This document shows, piece by piece, positions 4,545 to 63,114 of a stretch of 64,000 bases of DNA. How positions within the stretch are numbered: position 1 is the first letter of the stretch; each line of letters starts with the position of its first letter. The DNA is from Podarcis pityusensis (taxonomy: Eukaryota): assembly GCA_964106645.2 (NCBI GenBank), contig OZ067041.1, one strand, 5' to 3'. The position numbers were made by a program, and so were the translations under genes. The notes under the pieces are model-generated. The model had not been told where the DNA came from, ran no database searches, and saw only the letters and a list, made by a program, of their open reading frames with translations.

Positions 4545-7113
4545 AAATAAAAGTGTGAATCCAGCCAATGTGAAACGTTAGATTCAAGTAGTAATAGTGA
4601 ACTTCTACAATAAACATTAAATTATTATTTAGAATCCATTATGTATTCTTATTCCAACATGAGGATGAATATTTTAATTCAGAAAAGAGGACTGTAAATT
4701 GACGTGTTATTCTCTATTCATAGTAATTCTGGTTTTGGAAGTTGCAGTGTAACTGAACTTCAGCGTCAGAACAAAGTAACTCAAGCTGTAGGTATGTATA
4801 CCTGCCAACCAAGAATAACAGGCCACATATCTGATCAAGTGGATTCTAGTCAACAACAACAACAACATTTTCTTAGTTTCTCAGAGCAAAATAGCGGCCA
4901 TTTACATACATTTCCCCAACTGTCCACTACATTTTCTCTTTCTTTTAGTATAGTCCCAATTTTATCCATGGATACCATAGTTAGTTGTTACTTGGTTGTT
5001 GAAGAATCAATTTCATACTCACTTCTTGAAAGCTATAAGTGTTTTATCTGGGATTGTCAAAGCTATGTAGGTGTGGCCCTGATGACTCCCTGACAGGGAG
5101 GGTCCTGGAAGCTTACGTAAGTTATTCCAGGCTTTGCAAAGGAAAAGCAGGATGCAAACGAGCCCTGCTCAAGCTTGTTGGCTACCAGCTCTGTAGGTTA
5201 GCCATCTTGGGCCTATTATTCCCTGAGAACAGCATAGTGCTGGATTTAATTGCGAAGCCTCAGGCAGTGGACAGAGTGTATGTTCATTTTCTTAGCTCCT
5301 TTGGTTTTACATGTTCAGATGTTTGAGCTGTCTCTGCCAGCTGTCATTCCACAAGCTGCTGGTTCCTTTTCCACAGACCAGCTGCTTCCCAGTGGTAGGA
5401 AAAGGAAGAAGCTACCCCCTCAACATCTTGCCATTATATAATGCACCACACAGACCACATCAGGTGTATGCTTTTAATTGAAGATACACTGGGGTGTACA
5501 GTCAAGAAACAGAAAATGGATAACAAGAACAATTAAAATACTGTTCTAATGATACTTATAACTCAGGTGGGGAGCAGAAAATGAGGCAGTTGTGAAGTAG
5601 TGAAGGTGCATAGAGCAGTGTTCCACATGGCTTGTTTTTGCTGTGAAGACAACAGTTATGTTAGAAGACCCAGACCAAAATTACCGAATTAGATTTTTGT
5701 TTTTTGGAATGCTCAGCATTGTTTTGCATAGAAAAACCCACATGATAATTTACACTTGGGCCAAATCTTTATTGGAACCAGCGAAAACGTCACAGAATTG
5801 TGGCAAGTTTCACATTCTCCAGAATTCTTGCTTGGGCAAGATGCTATGCAAAGCACGGGATAAGAACAATGAGCTCGCCAAAGGAGCTGTGGACTCAGAA
5901 AGGTTGAAAACCTCTGCCCTATGGAAAGGAGTTCCAAGAACTGAGGAAGAGTGACTATGATTTAATATTTCATAATCTCAAGGACATGGGATGAGACAGC
6001 CTCCAAATAATTTGGTTATACCAGTCGAAGTGTAGCCACCTTGAACCATCTCAGATATTACATGGCAGCAAACCCAGATTTGTCACCACCTGCTCAGTTA
6101 ATAGAGATAAGTAGCTGATCTCTCTGACAATAAACTTGTAGGATGTACATGGACTTACTTCGGTTTGTTACATGTAGTCTTTAGTATCTTGTATCCAGAG
6201 TCTATCAGGTTGGTAATGGGAATTCTGTAAACTGCATGAATTCCTTACTTATTAGTGGTCTGTGCATAACATTCATTGGGGCAAAAAGCAGGATTTCCTG
6301 TTTCCTCCCCAGGAATGGCTCACCAGATTTCTTTCATTTTTGTTAGGTAGAAATAATTTTATGAATGTTAATAGCAAGATTGTTGTAAAATTTTACATTT
6401 CTTATAGACTATTAGCTATTTCTTCAATACTAAAAACTTTTAAAAGGAAGAACTGTTTTTTATTCACCTCTAAAATGTGGTGTCTAAAAGTGACAGGTTA
6501 ATTTCAGATTCAGATTTGATTGAGCATATGCCTTTTTCATGCTTAAGAGAACTAAAATAGAGCTGTCTTTAGAAATTGGTATATTAGGAAAATGAATTCT
6601 AATCAAGGGGAAAAACCCTTTCCCCATACTTGTGTATTTCTAATCATTGTTAGATTTTTCTCCACAGAATACGGTACTTTTCTTGACAAATGTTTAGAAT
6701 TAACAGAACATTTAATTCATACACTTGGTGTAAAATATGCTGTAATATACTTTACAAAAAATAAATTCTAATAGACATGTTAGTTGTACTGTATAGCATA
6801 TCTTTAAAATAACAATTCTAAGTATGAGTGTACTGCTAATGAAAGAATCCAATAATAGTAATAGTAAACAATTACTTTGGCCTACATACCAAAATAATGT
6901 GAATTAAAAATGTGCAGGATAATCATTGTTACTGGGTCACTGTGAAAATGCACCTCATTTATACTTGGATATCTCTGAAATAGTACAATAAATTCCATGT
7001 GAAACATAATAATGTGAAACATTATTATTAGATGTTTAAATGTGTGTGTGTGGGGGGGGAACTGTGGTTAATTTGCTACATCTCCATGATATTCTGATGG
7101 TTAAGGTTACTGT

Positions 7114-7898: not shown

Positions 7899-8038
7899 NN
7901 NNNNNNNNNNNNNNNNNNNNNNNNNNNNNNNNNNNNNNNNNNNNNNNNNNNNNNNNNNNNNNNNNNNNNNNNNNNNNNNNNNNNNNNNNNNNNNNNNNNN
8001 NNNNNNNNNNNNNNNNNNNNNNNNNNNNNNNNNNNNNN
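7899..8038. other. Assembly gap
   Basis: Run of N. Confidence 1.
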
Positions 8039-15399: not shown

Positions 15400-15571
15400 N
15401 NNNNNNNNNNNNNNNNNNNNNNNNNNNNNNNNNNNNNNNNNNNNNNNNNNNNNNNNNNNNNNNNNNNNNNNNNNNNNNNNNNNNNNNNNNNNNNNNNNNN
15501 NNNNNNNNNNNNNNNNNNNNNNNNNNNNNNNNNNNNNNNNNNNNNNNNNNNNNNNNNNNNNNNNNNNNNNN
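15400..15571. other. Assembly gap
   Basis: Run of N. Confidence 1.
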
Positions 15572-19589: not shown

Positions 19590-19953
19590 NNNNNNNNNNN
19601 NNNNNNNNNNNNNNNNNNNNNNNNNNNNNNNNNNNNNNNNNNNNNNNNNNNNNNNNNNNNNNNNNNNNNNNNNNNNNNNNNNNNNNNNNNNNNNNNNNNN
19701 NNNNNNNNNNNNNNNNNNNNNNNNNNNNNNNNNNNNNNNNNNNNNNNNNNNNNNNNNNNNNNNNNNNNNNNNNNNNNNNNNNNNNNNNNNNNNNNNNNNN
19801 NNNNNNNNNNNNNNNNNNNNNNNNNNNNNNNNNNNNNNNNNNNNNNNNNNNNNNNNNNNNNNNNNNNNNNNNNNNNNNNNNNNNNNNNNNNNNNNNNNNN
19901 NNNNNNNNNNNNNNNNNNNNNNNNNNNNNNNNNNNNNNNNNNNNNNNNNNNNN
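19590..19953. other. Assembly gap
   Basis: Run of N. Confidence 1.
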
Positions 19954-25977: not shown

Positions 25978-26094
25978 CATAGAATCATAGAGTTGAAAGG
26001 GACCACTAGGATCAGGTAGTCCAACTCCCTGCAATGCTTGAACCCACAACCTTGAGATTAAAAGTCTCATGCTCAACTAATTGAGCTACCCCAG
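25978..26094 (-). mobile_element. tRNA-Lys-derived SINE with CR1-like 3' tail (internally deleted)
   Basis: Reverse complement has a TAGCTCAATTAGTTGAGCATGAGAC...GGTTCAAG head and ends CTCTATGATTCTATG. Confidence 0.75.
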
Positions 26095-27003
26095 CTTGGA
26101 TTTTGTTCGCTTGTAAAGGTAAGAGATTCTTAAGAAACATCATCCCCCACACATATGGCAATTTTTAGCAAAAGTGCTAATGAAAATTTGTCAGCCATTT
26201 AGTTTTGCATTTTTCCTGATATACACATTTCATATGGACTTTCGTTTAAGAGACACATTTTTGCAAGCAGTGTTCTTCTGCATGCTTCTTTTAAAAAAAT
26301 AAAAGCATTTTTGTTTGGGGGGGGGAGAAGAGGAACTGCATCGCAAAATTCAGAAGAGCAGGGCTCCATTGTGGCCCATGGCACTGCCCCTCCCCCGTTT
26401 GCATGCAAGATGGATTGTACCATATGTTATATCCAAAACTTAGTGCCCTTGATTCAACAAGTTCAAAATGGGCATAACTGTTAAAATCATAATTTTGCCC
26501 TAAGTTTAATAGAGCCGCTCCTTCTGCCCGCAGCATACCAACCCACACAGTGGTGAGTGCCTGCAAGGTAGTGCATACATGTATGCTTTCTCTTGGTCAT
26601 ATGTACGCCATGCACAAATTCTTGTCTGAGAAGTTTTGCTTGAGTATCATAAAGTTACACAAAGTTTGTGCTTTATTTATAGTGCAATCCATCCCAGTGC
26701 TTCAATGTATGAGGAAGGATGTCAGGGTAATCCATGATTCACCATGATGTAAAGAGCTGCACCGAGCTTCGGCCTTGCATGCTCTCCTCTTCTCCTCAAG
26801 CATGACTGTGGAGAGGAGATATAGAAGCTTTCGCTTCCGTTTAAGTGAATCATAGCTTTCCATGTCACCCAAGTCTGGCAAACTGCAGTTAACTTTTACT
26901 ACTGCTGGTTCCAAACAAGCCAACTTAGTGACTGAAACTGGCTTGCTTCCATGAACAGTTGTTAAGATTAACCACAGTTACAGGTCTAGGTGACACACTG
27001 AGT

Positions 27004-28335
27004 TGAGCGAAATAAGTATTTGATCCCTTTGCAAACAATGACTTAGTACTTGGTGGCAAAACCCTTGTTGGCAATTACAGAGGTCAGCCGTTTCTTGTAG
27101 GTGGCCACCAGGTTTGCACACATCTCAGGAGGTATTTTGTCCCACTCCTCTTTGCAGATCCTCTCCAAGTCAGTAAGATTCCGAGGCTGATGTGTAGCTA
27201 CTTGAACCTTCAGCTCCCTCCACAGATTTTCAATGGGATTAAGGTCTGGAGACTGGCTAGGCCACTCCAGGACCTTAATGTGCTTCTTCTTGAGCCACTC
27301 CTTTGTTGCCTTGGCCGTGTGTTTTGTGTCATTGCCATGCTGGAATACCCATCCTCGACCCATTTTCAATGCCCTGGCTGAGGGAAGGAGGTGCTCACCC
27401 AAGATTTGACGATACATGGTCCCGTCCATCGTCCCTTCAATGCGGTGAAGGTGTCCTGTCCCCTTAGGAGAAAAGCACCCCCAAAGCATAATATGTCCTT
27501 CTCCATGTTTGACGGTGGGGATGGTGTTCTTGGGGCCGTAGGCAGCATTCCTCCTCCTCCAAACATGGTGAGTTGAGTTGATGCCAAAGAGCTCGATTTT
27601 GGTCTCATCTGACCACAACTTTCACCCACTTTCACCCACTTTCTCCTCTGGGTCATTCAGATGTGCATTGGCAAACTGCAGACAGCTTGAGCAAGGGGAC
27701 CTTGCAGGCTCTGCAAGATCTCTGTCCTTCACGGCGTAGTGTGTTACCAACTGTTTTCATGGTGACTATGGTCCCAGCTGCCCTGACATCACTGACAAGT
27801 TCCCCCCATGTAGTTCTGGGCTTCTTCATCACAGTACTCCTGATCATTGCAACTCCACAAGATGAGATCTTGCATGGAGCTCCAGACCGAGGGAGGTTGG
27901 CAGTTATTTTGTGTTTCTTTCATTTGCGAATTATTGCACCAACTGTTGTCACCTTCTCACCAAGCTGCTTGGCAATAGTCTTGTAGCCCAGTCCAGCCTT
28001 GTGCAGGTCTACAATGTTGTCCCTGACATCCTTGGACAGCTGTTTGGTCTTGGTCATGGTGGCTACTTTGGAATCTGCTGGATTGATTGCTTCTGTCGAC
28101 AGGTGTCTTTTGTACAGGTACTGTAACAAGCTGGGATTATAGGTGAGACCTCTCCCTTACAGCAGGTGCTTCTAATCTCAGCTCCTTACATACAGTGAAG
28201 ATACCAGGTAGCCTGACATCTGGCTGGTTGATAGGGGATCAAATACTTATTTCACTCATTATAATGCACATCAATCTCTGGCTTTTGTCTTCTGGGTGTT
28301 TTCCTGTTGTTATTCTGTCTCTCACAGCTACAGTA
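27004..28335 (-). mobile_element. Tc1-family DNA transposon, decayed, outer ends truncated
   Basis: Inverted motif GGGATCAAATACTTATTTC(A/G)CTCA at 27004-27027 and 28235-28258 flanking a transposase. Confidence 0.92.
27043..28057 (-). pseudogene. Tc1-like DD34E transposase pseudogene
   Basis: MTKTKQLSKDVRDNIVDLHKAG (paired-like HTH); stop at 27920-27922; frameshifts near 27620-27690 including a 10-bp duplication TTTCACCCAC; WSDETK, FQHGND (catalytic D replaced by G), 34 aa, SPDLNPIE; ends GFATKY*. Confidence 0.93.
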
Positions 28336-42290: not shown

Positions 42291-42647
42291 NNNNNNNNNN
42301 NNNNNNNNNNNNNNNNNNNNNNNNNNNNNNNNNNNNNNNNNNNNNNNNNNNNNNNNNNNNNNNNNNNNNNNNNNNNNNNNNNNNNNNNNNNNNNNNNNNN
42401 NNNNNNNNNNNNNNNNNNNNNNNNNNNNNNNNNNNNNNNNNNNNNNNNNNNNNNNNNNNNNNNNNNNNNNNNNNNNNNNNNNNNNNNNNNNNNNNNNNNN
42501 NNNNNNNNNNNNNNNNNNNNNNNNNNNNNNNNNNNNNNNNNNNNNNNNNNNNNNNNNNNNNNNNNNNNNNNNNNNNNNNNNNNNNNNNNNNNNNNNNNNN
42601 NNNNNNNNNNNNNNNNNNNNNNNNNNNNNNNNNNNNNNNNNNNNNNN
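42291..42647. other. Assembly gap
   Basis: Run of N. Confidence 1.
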
Positions 42648-50820: not shown

Positions 50821-50951
50821 GATGGCTCAGTCAGTAGAGCATGAGACTCTTAATCTCCGAGTTGTGGGTTCAAGCCCCACGTTGGGCAAAAGATTCCTGC
50901 TCTGCAGAAGGTTGGAGCCTCCAGGTCTCTTTCAACTCCACAATTCTATGA
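50821..50951 (+). mobile_element. tRNA-Lys(CTT)-derived SINE with CR1-like tail
   Basis: GCTCAGTCAGTAGAGCATGAGACTCTTAATCTCCGAGTTGTGGGTTCAAGCCCCACGTTGGGC is close to vertebrate tRNA-Lys-CTT but lacks the 5' acceptor strand; ends TTCAACTCCACAATTCTATGA. Confidence 0.85.
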
Positions 50952-52369: not shown

Positions 52370-52509
52370 NNNNNNNNNNNNNNNNNNNNNNNNNNNNNNN
52401 NNNNNNNNNNNNNNNNNNNNNNNNNNNNNNNNNNNNNNNNNNNNNNNNNNNNNNNNNNNNNNNNNNNNNNNNNNNNNNNNNNNNNNNNNNNNNNNNNNNN
52501 NNNNNNNNN
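52370..52509. other. Assembly gap
   Basis: Run of N. Confidence 1.
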
Positions 52510-54942: not shown

Positions 54943-56557
54943 TACTATGAGTAAAACTGCCACTCCCGTGTTTTTGGCCAAGTAGAGGTGGTTTTATGAA
55001 GTAGCTCATTCATTCCTTCTTAGTCACAGACCTCTAAGTGTCCTCAACTCAGGAAATGTTTGGGGCATTCAGCACCTCAAATTGTCAGTCAAGCCAATTT
55101 GAAGTGCCCATTAATCAATTAGTTATGAACTTCATCTTTATGCCTTGAGACAGTTAATATGTCAGGTCTTTTGTAGTGTCGCTGAAGCTGCACATTCTTT
55201 GTGAAATACTAATAGAACTTGGCTATTAGGATGGGCATGAAACAAAAAATTATCTTTCCATGAAAACTGAAGATACAAAGATAGGTGACAAGGAACTGCC
55301 ATGGTGACATTTGTATTATGCCTTTTGAAGTGCACTGTCATCTTACATATGTATGGCAGTAATATTTGGAAAGAATGTTAAGTCCCAGATAGCACTGAGC
55401 ATTTTTTATGAGCATAACATATGTAGCGTTTGTGAAACTTAACGTGGGACTTGTATTTGCAAATTTACTTTGGAATACACATCAAATATGATCATGGTCC
55501 AACATACTACCTCACAGTGGCAGTTAATACATCTGAATGCCTAGAACAGGGGTAGCCGATCTGATGCCCTCCAGAAGTTCAGGACTACAGGAGTTGGCCT
55601 AGAAAACAAACAATGATAGCTAAGATATTTCTGTTCTCCTTGAGACCTTCGTATCTGGCCATGGTCTCATCAAAAAGCAGTTTCTCTACCTAAAGGCACC
55701 TATCTGATGACTCGTTTACTGAACATTGTATGAATATTCTAGTATTAATTATTGTCACAAATGCTCATGTAAGCAGGTCTACAAGCATGTATTGGATATT
55801 TGCCTGTTATTAAATGTGTGATAATGTGCAGCAATACTGATGGCTTTGTAGAATTAGGGAGTGGCCTTATTATAATCATTAAATATTAATTAAATTTGTT
55901 ACACCATACACAAAGAACTGTCTCAAAATGACCATCTTAAAAGCCATATTTAAAATGATTTATGATAAACAGTTCCTAAAAATTCTCATCCAACAACACA
56001 ATAAGAAAGATGAATTGACTTATTTACTGATTTGTTCCATTGCAGTGGATGCCCTCCGCGGCCCATGCATTACTACATCTTGTCACTAATTCCTGGAAAG
56101 AGGTGACTAATATGTCCCATGGTTATAAAAGTTTATTCATACTGATAGTGGTTTTGTTTCAGAGGTCAATAAAAAATCTCTTAGGGATCTCTGACTCTTA
56201 AAAAGAAGATTACATTGTTTTCAAGTCTGGAAGAGTTCTGTTGTGTTGCTTTTAAGTCTGTGTAACCAGACTCTGTGTAATTTTATACCTTAAATCAAGA
56301 TTTAATCCCCAAGTCCCTTAATCGCACAAAACCATAAACATCAGAAATATAGCTAGTTTCTTGTTTTAACACCATTATCCCCTTAAAAAAACCCTTCTCC
56401 AGCACACTATAATAAACTTATTATGTGATTCAATTCCGAATTTTGCATTGTTATCAGGTGATATCCAATATTGTGCAAGCAAATTTCCACCCATGCAAAA
56501 GGATGTTCTCTTCTTCTTCTCCCCATGCAACTCTCACCCCCAAATCTTCTTTCAAGA

Positions 56558-56664
56558 AGTGATATCTGAAGAAGTGTGCATGCACACGAAAGCTCATACC
56601 GAGAACAAACTTAGTTGGTCTCTAAGGTGCTATTGGACAATTTTTTTTATTCTTTTCATATATT
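56558..56664 (+). mobile_element. Short Penelope-like-element-derived insertion
   Basis: Flanked by direct repeat TCTTCTTTCAAGA (56545-56557 and 56665-56677); contains a hammerhead core and TTGGTCTCTAAGGTGC, which I recall as typical of reptile Penelope ends. Confidence 0.75.
56560..56601 (+). ncRNA. Minimal type-I hammerhead ribozyme motif
   Basis: UGAUAU-CUGAAGA-A-GUGUG(CAUG)CACAC-GAAA-GC-UC|AUACCG: intact core, stem II, palindromic AGCU stem III, stem I with one A.C mismatch. Confidence 0.75.
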
Positions 56665-59600
56665 TCTTCTTTCAAGAGTCTTCCTCCCCAAGGTGGGGGA
56701 ATAGGAGAAGGGGAAGTTTCATTGTGCTAGGGTAAATCTCTTGGTGGGTGGACCCAGTTGGATCCTTCTTTGTGGTAGTAGTGGTATATTTTTTTATTGG
56801 CTGTTCCTGCCTATCAAGAGCTTTCCTACCATAAAATGCCTACAAATAAAATTTAGGAGTTTTATTTATATATCAAAATGTGTTCTTATGCCATGTGATA
56901 AACAAAACCTGACCACTTGATGCAATTGCTTGTCCATATTAGGCCTGGTACATACATTTAACCTTCTCAATACTAGGTTGTTGATAGGCTTGTTTCCATC
57001 AGTCAGTTTCTGCTTACACTCCCCCTCCCCTCAATTCCTTTCACACCGGGACAAGACGCACCACTTGCTGCAAAGCAAGGAGGAGTGCGAAGAAAGCTGC
57101 AGCTCCCATCTCTTCCCATCCCTCCATGGCTGTTGGAGAGAGGAGGAAGGCGAGGGCTAAGGGAGCCATTTTTGTATTACTATAGCAGATAGTCCTCTGT
57201 CCTTTCCTTTAGATGATGGCAACATGTTCTGTGACATTGCCACTTTTGAGATCTTGCTTCATTAGATTGGGTGACTGTTTATTTGAAATTGTAATGAAAT
57301 ATTTACTTTATAGAGCTATAAGGATTAGCTGAGATAATTGAGTGAGGTTGATTTGGAGCTTTCAGTGTAATAGGTGCCCCCCCTTCCCCTTGTTTGAATA
57401 CAGAGCTCTGCTAGGATGAATGAGGGAGCGAGTGTGTGTCTGCCTGTCACTTTCTCTCTATATATGTTGCTTTTTCTCCTGGAGATAAGTGGGGCCTAAT
57501 GCTGAACAAATACTGGAAATCAGAAGCTACTGAGAATCATTCGCTTCCCTCTTTCCCATGGCAGCATGATAGACACTCAGTCAAAGAGTCTCCCCCCCTC
57601 CTCTCCGCAGAGCAACAATTTTGTCACCACAAGCAAATCCAATTGAAAAGTCCCTTCGACCGGAGGGGAGAAAACTCCAGTTGTCAGAATCAGCAAACAG
57701 AATGAAAAGAACCAAGAGGAGTAAATTGGCACCTGGTGCAGCCGTGGCTGTTTGTGATAGGCTGCTGCATTGTGTTGGGTAGACATTCAAGCATTTTCAG
57801 ATATAATGGAAGAAATTAATGCAAATGAGTGAATGGAATGAAATGTATTTTAATGCAGATTTGAGGGACTCTCGCAAACTGCTTGATAACAAGTCACTGT
57901 TAGAAAAGGCCTACATTGTGAGGATTCATTTTCCCCCCATTTCTTCTCACTAGTGGCTCATAAGGGCCCTTTTGTTCTCTAAGTAAACTCTTTCTAAACT
58001 ATTGACATTGCTCATTTATGTGGATTTCAGATGCCCCCCCCCCCTTCTGACAAAGTAGCCTTGGGTGATCTGGGAAAACGTTAATTGCAAGAGGACAAGG
58101 AAACTGGTTGAAACAAGAAATTCAATCATTAAGTGTAATGTTGCAGTTGTCCATGCCTCATTATAGCATGCACACAAGGCAATAAAATGCATGTTTCACA
58201 AACAAATCTTTTAACAAGTCTAGTTCAAGAGCCTCCAGCTTTACACCCCTTTCTGTCTTTTAGTCTTTGGTCATGATCACAAATAAACTTTAGATGCCCT
58301 GTGCAGTCCTTCAGAATTATTTTAGAGTCCTGTAGATTTCAGTAAAAGCAAGCTTTTCATATTCTGGAATCATTATTTTGCCCATTCACTTTAGTAGTCC
58401 TCTGCTTAGAAGAGAATGCTTCGGTTCTTTTGCTTGTTTTATTATTGCATGGATGCTTGACAACAACAAACAAGATAGAGCAAATGTTCTGTGGAAATTT
58501 TGGTTGTGTGTGTGTGTTTCATTTCACCAAAACATTAAATAGATTTTCACTCATCTGTGCTCTCCTTTCTTTGCTTTTTGTGGGAATTAAAAGCATTTTA
58601 TCTGGCTTCATTGAGTTTAGTGTGTTGTGGGGAGAGAACAGCTAAACAGAAAACATCTTCCTGGGTATCTGTAGCTTTAGAGCTACTAAGCTAAGAGACC
58701 CAAGAGTAAAGCAGTTAGAAGGGAAAGAGGTAACAGATTCAGCATTGTCCAAAAGTTCCAGACCAGTGATTAATGTGTAAGATAATGGACTTGGGAAATG
58801 AGTAAACACTCCCGTACTCCCTGCTTTGTGCTTGAATGACTTGATGACAAGGGCAAAGCAAGGTGAGAATTTAAACAGAACTATAGGAAAAAAGAGACAA
58901 AGACTAGCAACAAGCAAGCCAAAGTGGGAGTTTACTGGTTTGTGCTGTTGAACAGTATAAAATACTTATTTAAACTTTTGAAATGGATTTATTTAATACT
59001 ATTATCCTTAGGTGTGCTCATTTTTTAAGGAAAGAAAAATTAAAGATTGACTTGGTTTGGATAAAACATTAGGGCTGTTAAGCGTTTGTTTTACACACTT
59101 AGTACAACTGCACTTTGCCTTTCAACCCATTTACTCAAGGGATGTTTATAAAAACACTACTTTAACTTTTAAAATTGATTAATAATTTCCCTCAGAACTG
59201 AATAACCAAATAATTTAATTTAATGTAAGACCACCATAAGTATCATTGGCAGAATGCAGATGCTAGTACCCAGAAAAATAAATAAGTAAATGATATTCTG
59301 TTAACTAAACCCACATATTTATAGACCTTGAGATAGATACATATTGAAGTACGTAGTTTGAGTTAGATGAGACGTCAGTAAACAAAAGTTAACTCTTTGT
59401 TAGAATGAAAGGTGGTCTTAATATTTTCTTTTTCAGTTCCTAACATAGTGAAATTAGGCTAAAAATAAACAAGTGTGCCTTTGTAGTAATTGTATCTCCA
59501 TTGATTAAAATTGATTGCTACCTATTAATCAATGAAATCAATGGGTGATATCAAACCCATATTCACAGTAGACCTATTGAGGTCAGTTGACAAGTATGTT

Positions 59601-62934: not shown

Positions 62935-63114
62935 NNNNNNNNNNNNNNNNNNNNNNNNNNNNNNNNNNNNNNNNNNNNNNNNNNNNNNNNNNNNNNNNNN
63001 NNNNNNNNNNNNNNNNNNNNNNNNNNNNNNNNNNNNNNNNNNNNNNNNNNNNNNNNNNNNNNNNNNNNNNNNNNNNNNNNNNNNNNNNNNNNNNNNNNNN
63101 NNNNNNNNNNNNNN
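62935..63114. other. Assembly gap
   Basis: Run of N. Confidence 1.

What the first reader, a model, noticed from the sequence alone, without database searches (positions are those of the whole stretch)
56545..56677. 107-bp mobile unit built around a hammerhead ribozyme (Penelope-type, retrozyme-like)
Seen: CTGAAGA at 56566-56572, an extra A, the 14-nt palindrome GTGTGCATGCACAC (stem II), GAAA at 56588-56591, AGCT as a self-complementary stem III, predicted cleavage after UC at 56595, and ATACCG pairing back to TGATAT (one A.C mismatch). The unit lies between exact 13-bp direct repeats and interrupts another repeat. Established: Penelope-like retroelements carry minimal type-I hammerheads with very short palindromic stem III, proposed to act as dimers. 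Inference: this ORF-less ribozyme-plus-tail was retrotransposed with its own TSD, so it could belong to a non-autonomous lizard family. If transcribed, it could cleave an intronic host RNA when paired with another copy.
Basis: partly seen in the sequence, partly recalled or inferred. Interest (0 to 1): 0.78.

Follow-up and report, generated by a model that had tools for sequence, protein, structure and literature searches.

The report
Solo Penelope-type hammerhead mini-retroelement copy
This 107-bp stretch is one old, single copy of a very abundant short retroelement of lizards that carries the minimal hammerhead-ribozyme motif typical of Penelope-like retrotransposons; it is an ordinary member of a described class and is probably inert here.

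Summary
A 107-bp insert (56558-56664) lies between exact 13-bp direct repeats. It carries a complete minimal type-I hammerhead: CUGAAGA, a bulged A, a 14-nt palindromic stem II, GAAA, an AGCU palindrome in place of helix III, cleavage-site C at 56595, and a short helix I with one A.C mismatch. A strict descriptor hits once in the window and never in 300 simulated windows.

The unit is not unique. In contigs of four related species about 5,000 contigs per run pile on 56563-56647. Summed depth there is about 100,000 times that of the flanks. Most copies lose homology at the same 5' point, and some are joined head to head, a Penelope-like element (PLE) hallmark. The hammerhead core does not vary at the 10% level, but neither does most of the tail, and no covariation is visible.

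All four species hold the insert at this locus, so it is old and no empty site was found. No second copy lies within the 64 kb, Rfam gives no hammerhead hit, the monomer does not fold as a hammerhead, and no RNA evidence exists.

This scan had already noted many such elements elsewhere in this genome, and follow-ups judged them ordinary. The literature describes PLE minimal hammerheads and PLE-derived non-autonomous retrozymes. Verdict: real but ordinary, low interest.

The parts
56545..56557 (.). Left copy of the 13-bp target-site duplication TCTTCTTTCAAGA
   Evidence: Exact direct repeat. Family homology in other copies ends a few bases to its right.
56558..56664 (+). 107-bp retro-inserted unit: minimal hammerhead plus conserved tail plus T-rich end. 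It has no ORF of its own and no poly(A).
56560..56565 (+). Helix I, 5' strand (positions 2.6-2.1). The A at 56562 makes the A.C mismatch. The loose-end consensus suggests other copies read ..AGTG directly before 56563, so this A looks extra or changed.
   Evidence: loose ends.
56566..56572 (+). Catalytic box C3-U4-G5-A6-A7-G8-A9
   Evidence: No variant reaches 10% among family contigs.
56573..56573 (+). Unpaired nucleotide between A9 and G10.1, a trait of PLE minimal hammerheads
   Evidence: trait described in PMC4209133.
56574..56587 (+). Helix II: 14-nt perfect palindrome with G10.1-C11.1. It folds as 5 bp plus a CAUG loop in cis, or as a 14-bp duplex in trans.
   Evidence: No variant reaches 10% among family contigs.
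56588..56591 (+). Catalytic box G12-A13-A14 plus A15.1
56591..56594 (+). AGCU palindrome (15.1, 15.2, 16.2, 16.1). There is no loop III, so helix III can form only between two copies.
   Evidence: The duplex energy is only -2.5 kcal/mol.
56595..56595 (+). C17; predicted cleavage lies 3' of it. About 35% of family depth has U here; both letters are allowed.
   Evidence: table 3.
56596..56601 (+). Helix I, 3' strand (positions 1.1-1.6). At 56601 most copies have A, whereas this copy has G.
56602..56637 (+). Conserved tail shared by the family. This copy differs from about 98% of family depth at 56633 (T against C).
   Evidence: tables 2, 3 and 8.
56638..56664 (+). T-rich 3' end. Its length and sequence vary among copies, and family homology fades between about 56637 and 56665.
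   Evidence: Loose ends behind 56637, 56646, 56647 and 56651.
56665..56677 (.). Right copy of the 13-bp target-site duplication

Best explanation
The unit is a solo insertion of a very abundant, non-coding, Penelope-type mini-retroelement. It holds only the part of a PLE-type RNA that runs from a fixed 5' end, a few bases upstream of hammerhead helix I, through the minimal hammerhead to a T-rich 3' end 69 nt past the cleavage site. By inference, a PLE reverse transcriptase/GIY-YIG endonuclease supplied in trans copied it into an AT-rich target and made the 13-bp duplication. This happened before the four related species sampled here diverged. The layout parallels the anole PLE PAc. There, reverse transcription starts inside the RNA about 85-92 nt downstream of the hammerhead cut site, so short products made of hammerhead plus downstream segment are expected. 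The hammerhead is carried as part of the element. As a single copy with a weakened helix I and no partner nearby, this locus is most likely catalytically and biologically idle.
For: Shown here:
- The motif and the duplication are real and are not chance.
- About 4,900-5,300 contigs per run from four species labels match 56563-56647 at 80% or more. Summed depth is 1.07-2.35 million against 8-21 on unique flanks.
- The 5' homology break is at 56563 in 96-107 listed contigs per run, against 14-22 at neighbouring positions. Upstream agreement is only 0.37-0.43, so most copies start where this one does.
- In other copies, joints on opposite strands link 56563-56565 to 56596-56611. These are head-to-head partial copies, the arrangement described for PLEs in PMC8557442.
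- There is no poly(A), and this copy holds no protein-coding gene; its only open frame is the 28-codon one noted in passing.
- Flank contigs of organisms E, F and G run into the insert up to 56588-56590. Contigs of E and G also run out of it from 56642.

From papers:
- A long helix II, the bulged base after A9, G10.1-C11.1, a palindromic 15.1-16.1 tetranucleotide and a 4-5 bp helix I define PLE minimal hammerheads. Most occur as single scattered motifs (PMC4209133).
- PAc starts reverse transcription internally at +111-118 and has its hammerhead cut site at +26 (PMC11167929).
- Non-LTR retrozymes are PLE-derived, with consensus lengths of 51-972 bp and dispersed solo monomers (bioRxiv 10.64898/2026.07.22.740005).
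Against: - No autonomous PLE with this hammerhead and tail in its pLTR was found or could be searched for. None lies in the window, and the pattern scans of public contigs were empty.
- The PAc hammerhead region has the same architecture but an unrelated sequence, so the parent lineage is unknown.
- Rfam hammerhead models give no hit even at E up to 10.
- No covariation is visible. The only sites varying at 10% or more (56595, 56601, 56603, 56607, 56633) lie outside paired core positions or at the end of helix I. The tail is as uniform as the ribozyme, so uniformity may reflect common descent and not selection.
- The tool warns that summed contig depth is not a copy number.
Confidence: 0.58

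Rival explanations
1. It is an ordinary, randomly 5'-truncated 3' end of a full-length autonomous Penelope-like element, with no separate short family. The coincident 5' ends would then be an artefact of how contigs were laid on a copy that itself ends there.
For: 5' truncation is the rule for PLE insertions (PMC8557442). A reference that ends at 56558 forces every longer copy to show a loose end there too. Earlier notes report longer non-coding hammerhead insertions in this genome.
Against: If most copies continued into a shared pLTR or ORF, the 30-letter loose-end consensus upstream of 56563 would agree well. It agrees only 0.37-0.43, with just the last 5-8 letters recurring. Truncation inside the unit would spread breaks across 56563-56647, yet the best-supported breaks all sit at 56561-56564.
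Confidence: 0.25
2. It is a monomer shed from a tandem-array non-LTR retrozyme. In that model arrays are transcribed, the hammerheads cut as dimers, monomers circularise, and the circles are reverse-transcribed, so this locus is a dead-end solo product.
For: The published model for animal type-I hammerhead repeats includes solo monomers as offspring (PMC7229834; preprint). Earlier notes in this genome report tandem arrays of Penelope-type hammerhead units (not tested here).
Against: This locus has one unit, with no tandem partner and no permuted junction. The unit starts upstream of the hammerhead and not at the cleavage site, which does not fit a linearised circle copied once. No circular RNA or any RNA evidence exists. 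For PAc, cleavage was not needed for insertion and no reads ended at the cut site (PMC11167929).
Confidence: 0.15
3. It is a functional host ribozyme that cleaves a host, possibly intronic, transcript, like the conserved amniote intronic hammerheads.
For: The core is intact. The insert has been kept at this locus in four related species.
Against: Retention over the small flank divergence seen here (0.5-2.8%) is expected for neutral DNA. The copy differs from the family's majority letter in helix I. The monomer does not adopt the hammerhead fold: the minimum-energy fold is -7.1 kcal/mol with stem II only, against -4.3 for helices I plus II, and the z-score is -0.21. There is no partner copy within 64 kb. 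PLE minimal hammerheads cleave poorly even as dimers (PMC4209133). No Rfam HH9/HH10 or other hammerhead hit was found. No gene context could be established.
Confidence: 0.02

Closest known systems
Minimal hammerhead ribozymes of Penelope-like elements (Cervera & de la Pena 2014, PMC4209133; Lunse, Weinberg & Breaker 2017, cited in PMC6765202)
   Same: It has the same core boxes and the unpaired base after A9. It has a long helix II closed by G10.1-C11.1 and no loop III but a palindromic tetranucleotide, here AGCU. Helix I is short with no defined loop. Such motifs occur in thousands of mostly single, scattered copies per genome, and cleavage is predicted only as a dimer.
   Different: Here the motif sits in a discrete unit of about 90-110 bp and not in the pLTR of an identifiable element with an ORF. 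Stem II is a perfect 14-nt palindrome. This copy has an A.C mismatch in helix I.
PAc / Poseidon_Ac of Anolis carolinensis (Frangieh et al. 2024, PMC11167929)
   Same: It is a lizard PLE whose hammerhead lies just upstream of the internal site where reverse transcription starts. Insertions therefore end a fixed distance past the hammerhead: about 85-92 nt in PAc and 69 nt here. It has an AT-rich target preference and a minimal ACGU/AGCU-type helix III.
   Different: PAc is a 2.7-kb autonomous element with an RT and GIY-YIG ORF that starts in stem II. The sequence of its hammerhead and downstream region is unrelated to this unit. Here an ATG in the stem II loop opens only a 28-codon frame to the end of the unit.
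Animal non-LTR retrozymes (Cervera & de la Pena 2020, PMC7229834; Li, Clavereau & Pollet 2026 preprint)
   Same: They are short, non-coding, AT-rich units with a type-I hammerhead, duplications longer than 4 bp and a PLE origin. Solo monomers are dispersed through the genome. Reptile families average 176 bp and the overall range starts at 51 bp.
   Different: Retrozymes are defined by tandem arrays and circular RNAs, and this locus is a single unit with no RNA evidence. Classical retrozyme hammerheads have canonical loops I and II with tertiary contacts, whereas this is the minimal PLE variant.
Schistosome Sm-alpha/Sj-alpha SINE-like hammerhead elements
   Same: They are short, very abundant, non-autonomous retroposons that carry a hammerhead.
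   Different: Those have a tRNA-like Pol III promoter head and a canonical hammerhead. No tRNA-like or A/B-box part is seen here.

Membership tests
Hammerhead ribozyme, type I, minimal PLE variant | Catalytic boxes C3U4G5A6N7G8A9 and G12A13A14 | tested here: met
   56566-56572 and 56588-56590. No variant reaches 10% across family contigs.
Hammerhead ribozyme, type I, minimal PLE variant | A15.1-U16.1 pair and a non-G at position 17 | tested here: met
   A56591, U56594 and C56595. Other copies have C or U at position 17.
Hammerhead ribozyme, type I, minimal PLE variant | Helix II closed by G10.1-C11.1, longer than the canonical 4 bp, preceded by one unpaired base | tested here: met
   Bulged A at 56573. 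G56574-C56587 closes a stem of 5 bp plus a 4-nt loop, which is a 14-nt palindrome.
Hammerhead ribozyme, type I, minimal PLE variant | Helix I of 4-5 bp or more | tested here: inconclusive
   This copy has 3 contiguous pairs, then an A.C mismatch, then C-G and G.U. The majority letters of other copies near 56562 and 56601 differ, but full copies could not be retrieved.
Hammerhead ribozyme, type I, minimal PLE variant | Palindromic 15.1-16.1 segment that allows helix III in a dimer | tested here: met
   AGCU at 56591-56594. The duplex energy is only -2.5 kcal/mol. Actual dimer formation is not testable here.
Hammerhead ribozyme, type I, minimal PLE variant | Covariation that supports the helices | tested here: inconclusive
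   No helix position varies at 10% or more among thousands of contigs, so there is nothing to covary.
Hammerhead ribozyme, type I, minimal PLE variant | Match to curated covariance models (Rfam Hammerhead_1, _3, _II, HH9, HH10) | tested here: not met
   No hammerhead family appears at gathering score or at E up to 10 on 401 bases. This is expected, because those models require loops that the minimal variant lacks.
Hammerhead ribozyme, type I, minimal PLE variant | Self-cleavage | not testable with these tools
   It needs in vitro transcription of monomer and tandem constructs.
Penelope-like element (autonomous) | ORF that encodes a telomerase-like RT and a GIY-YIG endonuclease | tested here: not met
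   The unit is 107 bp. None of the ten long ORFs scanned in the window is an RT or a GIY-YIG endonuclease.
Penelope-like element-derived insertion (non-autonomous or truncated) | Minimal hammerhead near the 3' end, no poly(A), a variable-length duplication, and an AT-rich target | tested here: met
   The criteria come from PMC4209133, PMC8557442 and PMC11167929.
Penelope-like element-derived insertion (non-autonomous or truncated) | Family shows partial tandems and/or inverted 5'-truncated copies joined head to head | tested here: met
   In other copies, opposite-strand joints link 56563-56565 to 56596-56611 in all four runs (table 5). This locus shows neither arrangement.
Penelope-like element-derived insertion (non-autonomous or truncated) | Sequence identity of the unit with the pLTR or 5' ORF end of an autonomous PLE in the same genome | not testable with these tools
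   No eukaryotic genome collection or repeat library was on hand. Pattern scans of metagenome and viral contigs were empty.
Non-LTR retrozyme | Two or more tandem units, each with a hammerhead | tested here: not met
   There is a single unit and no other copy in 64 kb.
Non-LTR retrozyme | Unit-length circular RNA | not testable with these tools
   No listed run that holds the stretch is on record as RNA.
SINE (Pol III head) | Head derived from tRNA, 7SL or 5S, with an internal promoter | tested here: not met
   No Rfam or ARAGORN hit lies in the unit.

The most novel reading that the evidence does not exclude
The family may be a discrete, roughly 90-110-nt, SINE-like parasite of Penelope-like elements with copy numbers around 10^4-10^5. 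That would place it among the shortest and most numerous PLE-dependent elements in a vertebrate. It would consist only of the hammerhead plus the segment that the PLE enzyme needs to start reverse transcription. In other copies the breakpoints of inverted partial arms fall at 56596-56611, directly 3' of the predicted cut. These could be genomic footprints of templates that had self-cleaved in vivo.
Probability: 0.12. Interest if true: 0.5.

Novelty: new member of a known kind. Interest (0 to 1): 0.14.

Why it matters
It matters little for this locus. The finding adds one more old, solo copy to a class that is already described, and this scan has met that class many times elsewhere in the same genome. 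The family as a whole could be a convenient natural data set. Thousands of short copies with a fixed 5' end might show what a PLE enzyme minimally needs in its template. They might also show whether hammerhead cleavage ever shapes the inserted products, which is still an open question for PLEs.

Tried and rejected
- Rfam at gathering score on the whole window, and at E up to 10 on 401 bases around the unit, gave no hammerhead family.
- A search for further copies in the window by pattern, blastn-short and nhmmer found none.
- Exact-pattern scans of metagenome contigs (twice) and viral contigs, for the hammerhead and for the hammerhead-tail junction, gave 0 hits. These collections are not expected to hold lizard DNA.
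- A literature search for the stem II and tail strings gave 0 papers. Lunse et al. 2017 is not held.
- The empty-site join of the flanks has no second copy in the window.
- A Pfam scan of ten long ORFs gave no PLE protein and no host-gene clue, so the 'intronic' claim stays untested.
- Chance origin is rejected. A host-function ribozyme is rejected as unlikely.
- I did not build a family consensus or a 'repaired' version of this copy. Differences from the majority letters are only described.
Full report
**Observation**

- Exact 13-bp direct repeats TCTTCTTTCAAGA lie at 56545-56557 and 56665-56677. They enclose 107 bp, 56558-56664.
- Inside lie CUGAAGA (56566-56572), one extra A (56573), the 14-nt palindrome at 56574-56587 and GAAA (56588-56591).
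- The tetranucleotide AGCU (56591-56594) follows directly, then C (56595).
- ATACCG (56596-56601) can pair with TGATAT (56560-56565). That helix has three Watson-Crick pairs, an A.C mismatch, a C-G pair and a G.U pair.

In standard hammerhead numbering this is C3-A9, a bulged base, helix II closed by G10.1-C11.1, then G12-A14. The segment A15.1-G15.2-C16.2-U16.1 has no loop III. C17 is the cleavage site, and helix I is short and open-ended.

The loose core pattern alone is at chance level in this window, 7 matches against 5.6 expected. A strict descriptor requires the boxes, a G-C-closed stem II of at least 4 bp, the palindromic helix III stand-in, a non-G at position 17 and at least 3 contiguous helix I pairs. 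It hits only this site on either strand and hits none of 300 Markov-simulated windows.

**Is it a repeat?**

The 64-kb window holds no second copy. The joined flanks also have no other copy in the window.

I then laid Logan contigs of four runs on 56000-57200 at 80% likeness. By their coded labels the runs are four different but closely related organisms (A, E, F, G).
- **Abundance.** Each run put about 4,900-5,300 contigs on 56563-56647. Summed word depth there is 1.07-2.35 million, against 8-21 on the unique flanks. The tool warns that this is not a copy number. The ratio is about 10^5 in all four runs, so I read it only as 'tens of thousands of copies or more'.
- **Variation.** At 56601 and 56633 this copy carries the minority letter. 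No core or stem II position varies at that level.
- **Limit of that evidence.** The tail is just as uniform. The data therefore show neither covariation nor extra conservation of the ribozyme over the rest of the unit.

**Family boundaries and arrangements**

- **5' side.** The best-supported homology breaks are at 56563 (96-107 listed contigs per run), with 14-22 at 56561, 56562 or 56564. The 30 letters upstream agree only 0.37-0.43, and just the last few (..AGTG) recur. Most copies therefore begin within a few bases of where this one begins. This copy seems to carry an extra or changed A at 56562, the very base that spoils helix I.
- **3' side.** Homology continues into a T-rich run of variable length and fades between about 56637 and 56665. 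This matches the end of the insert here.
- **Inverted joints.** Several contigs in every run join 56563-56565 to 56596-56611 on the opposite strand. These are head-to-head partial copies, an arrangement that Craig et al. describe as typical for PLE insertions (PMC8557442).

**Age**

- In organisms E, F and G, contigs anchored in the left flank run into the insert as far as 56588-56590.
- In E and G, contigs run from 56642 through the right repeat into the right flank (table 8).
- No contig skips the insert, so all four organisms carry it and no empty site was found.
- Flank differences from the window are about 0.5% (E), 1.4% (F) and 2.8% (G).

The insertion therefore predates the split of these organisms. 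I could not verify that because the organism names are coded.

**What it is**

Cervera and de la Pena list the traits of PLE minimal hammerheads: a long helix II, an unpaired base after A9, G10.1-C11.1, a palindromic 15.2-16.2 segment without loop III, and a helix I of 4-5 bp without a defined loop. They found thousands of mostly single, scattered copies per genome, thought to be truncated PLEs, with weak cleavage only as dimers (PMC4209133). All of these traits are present here.

Frangieh et al. showed the following for the anole PLE PAc (PMC11167929).
- The hammerhead overlaps the start of the ORF.
- The cut site is at +26.
- Reverse transcription starts internally at +111-118.
- The template segment needed for insertion lies just downstream of the hammerhead.
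- Hammerhead mutants insert normally.
- No RNA-seq reads end at the cut site.

The PAc consensus in their File S1 has the same architecture as this unit (CUGAGGA, bulge, stem II, GAAA, ACGU-C) but an unrelated sequence. The unit here ends 69 nt past its cut site. By analogy it is the piece of a PLE-type RNA between a fixed 5' end and the internal start site of reverse transcription.

[quoted passage not shown] Family consensus lengths run from 51 to 972 bp, with a mean of 176 bp in reptiles, and solo monomers are dispersed.

**What it probably does**

Most likely it does nothing at this locus.
- The 51-nt region folds only into stem II, at -7.1 kcal/mol with a z-score of -0.21.
- The hammerhead-like pairing of helices I and II is worth -4.3 kcal/mol. 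The intermolecular AGCU duplex adds -2.5 kcal/mol.
- The perfect palindrome would pair in trans far more strongly, at -25 kcal/mol.
- There is no partner copy in cis.
- No listed run that holds the stretch is on record as RNA.
- Whether the site is intronic could not be checked. The long ORFs of the window gave only a DDE_3 transposase remnant.

**Rivals**

- **Random truncation of a full PLE.** This fits the general habit of PLEs but not the low agreement upstream of the common 5' break.
- **Solo offspring of a tandem retrozyme array.** This remains possible. This scan's earlier notes report tandem arrays elsewhere in this genome, which I did not test. However, the unit is not permuted around the cleavage site.
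- **A host-selected ribozyme.** This is very unlikely.

**Earlier work of this scan**

Eighty-one notes in this same genome mention hammerhead and Penelope. The follow-ups shown all judged such loci ordinary members of an abundant non-coding PLE offshoot. My own read-laying result agrees with them independently.

**Limits**

- No eukaryotic genome collection or repeat library was available, so the parent PLE, the true copy number and full copies for a covariance test are missing.
- Pattern scans of metagenome and viral contigs were empty.
- I recall similar hammerhead-plus-tail sequences from other sauropsid genomes. That is memory only and was not tested.

**Verdict**

The functional speculation is unsupported, and the kind of element is already known. 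Interest is low.

Noticed in passing
window 56596-56611 (as seen in other copies of the family, table 5): In head-to-head arrangements elsewhere in the four genomes, the inverted partial arm always breaks within 16 nt just 3' of the predicted hammerhead cleavage site. Four contigs break exactly at 56596. This could be a detection window effect, or it could hint that cleaved RNAs serve as templates.
   Followed up: partly
window 56580-56664 (+): The ATG in the stem II loop opens a frame that stays open for 28 codons to the end of the unit and runs on into the flank. In the anole PLE PAc the ORF also starts in stem II. This may be a relic of a parent ORF start, or chance.
   Followed up: partly
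window 50823-50880 (+) and 26035-26095 (-): Two tRNA-like Rfam hits (39.9 and 32.8 bits) share a similar sequence, but ARAGORN calls no tRNA gene. They are probably heads of a tRNA-derived SINE.
   Followed up: no
window 27043-27618 (-): A 191-aa ORF matches Pfam DDE_3 at E 4e-13. It is a remnant of a Tc1/mariner-type DNA transposon.
   Followed up: no
window 56656-56737 and 56123-56163: The flank stretches show about 5-10 times and about 2-3 times raised contig depth in all four runs.
   Followed up: no
window 7899-8038, 15400-15571, 19590-19953, 42291-42647, 52370-52509, 62935-63114: There are six runs of N, 140-364 bases long. Several long 'ORFs' listed lie across two of them and are artefacts.
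   Followed up: no
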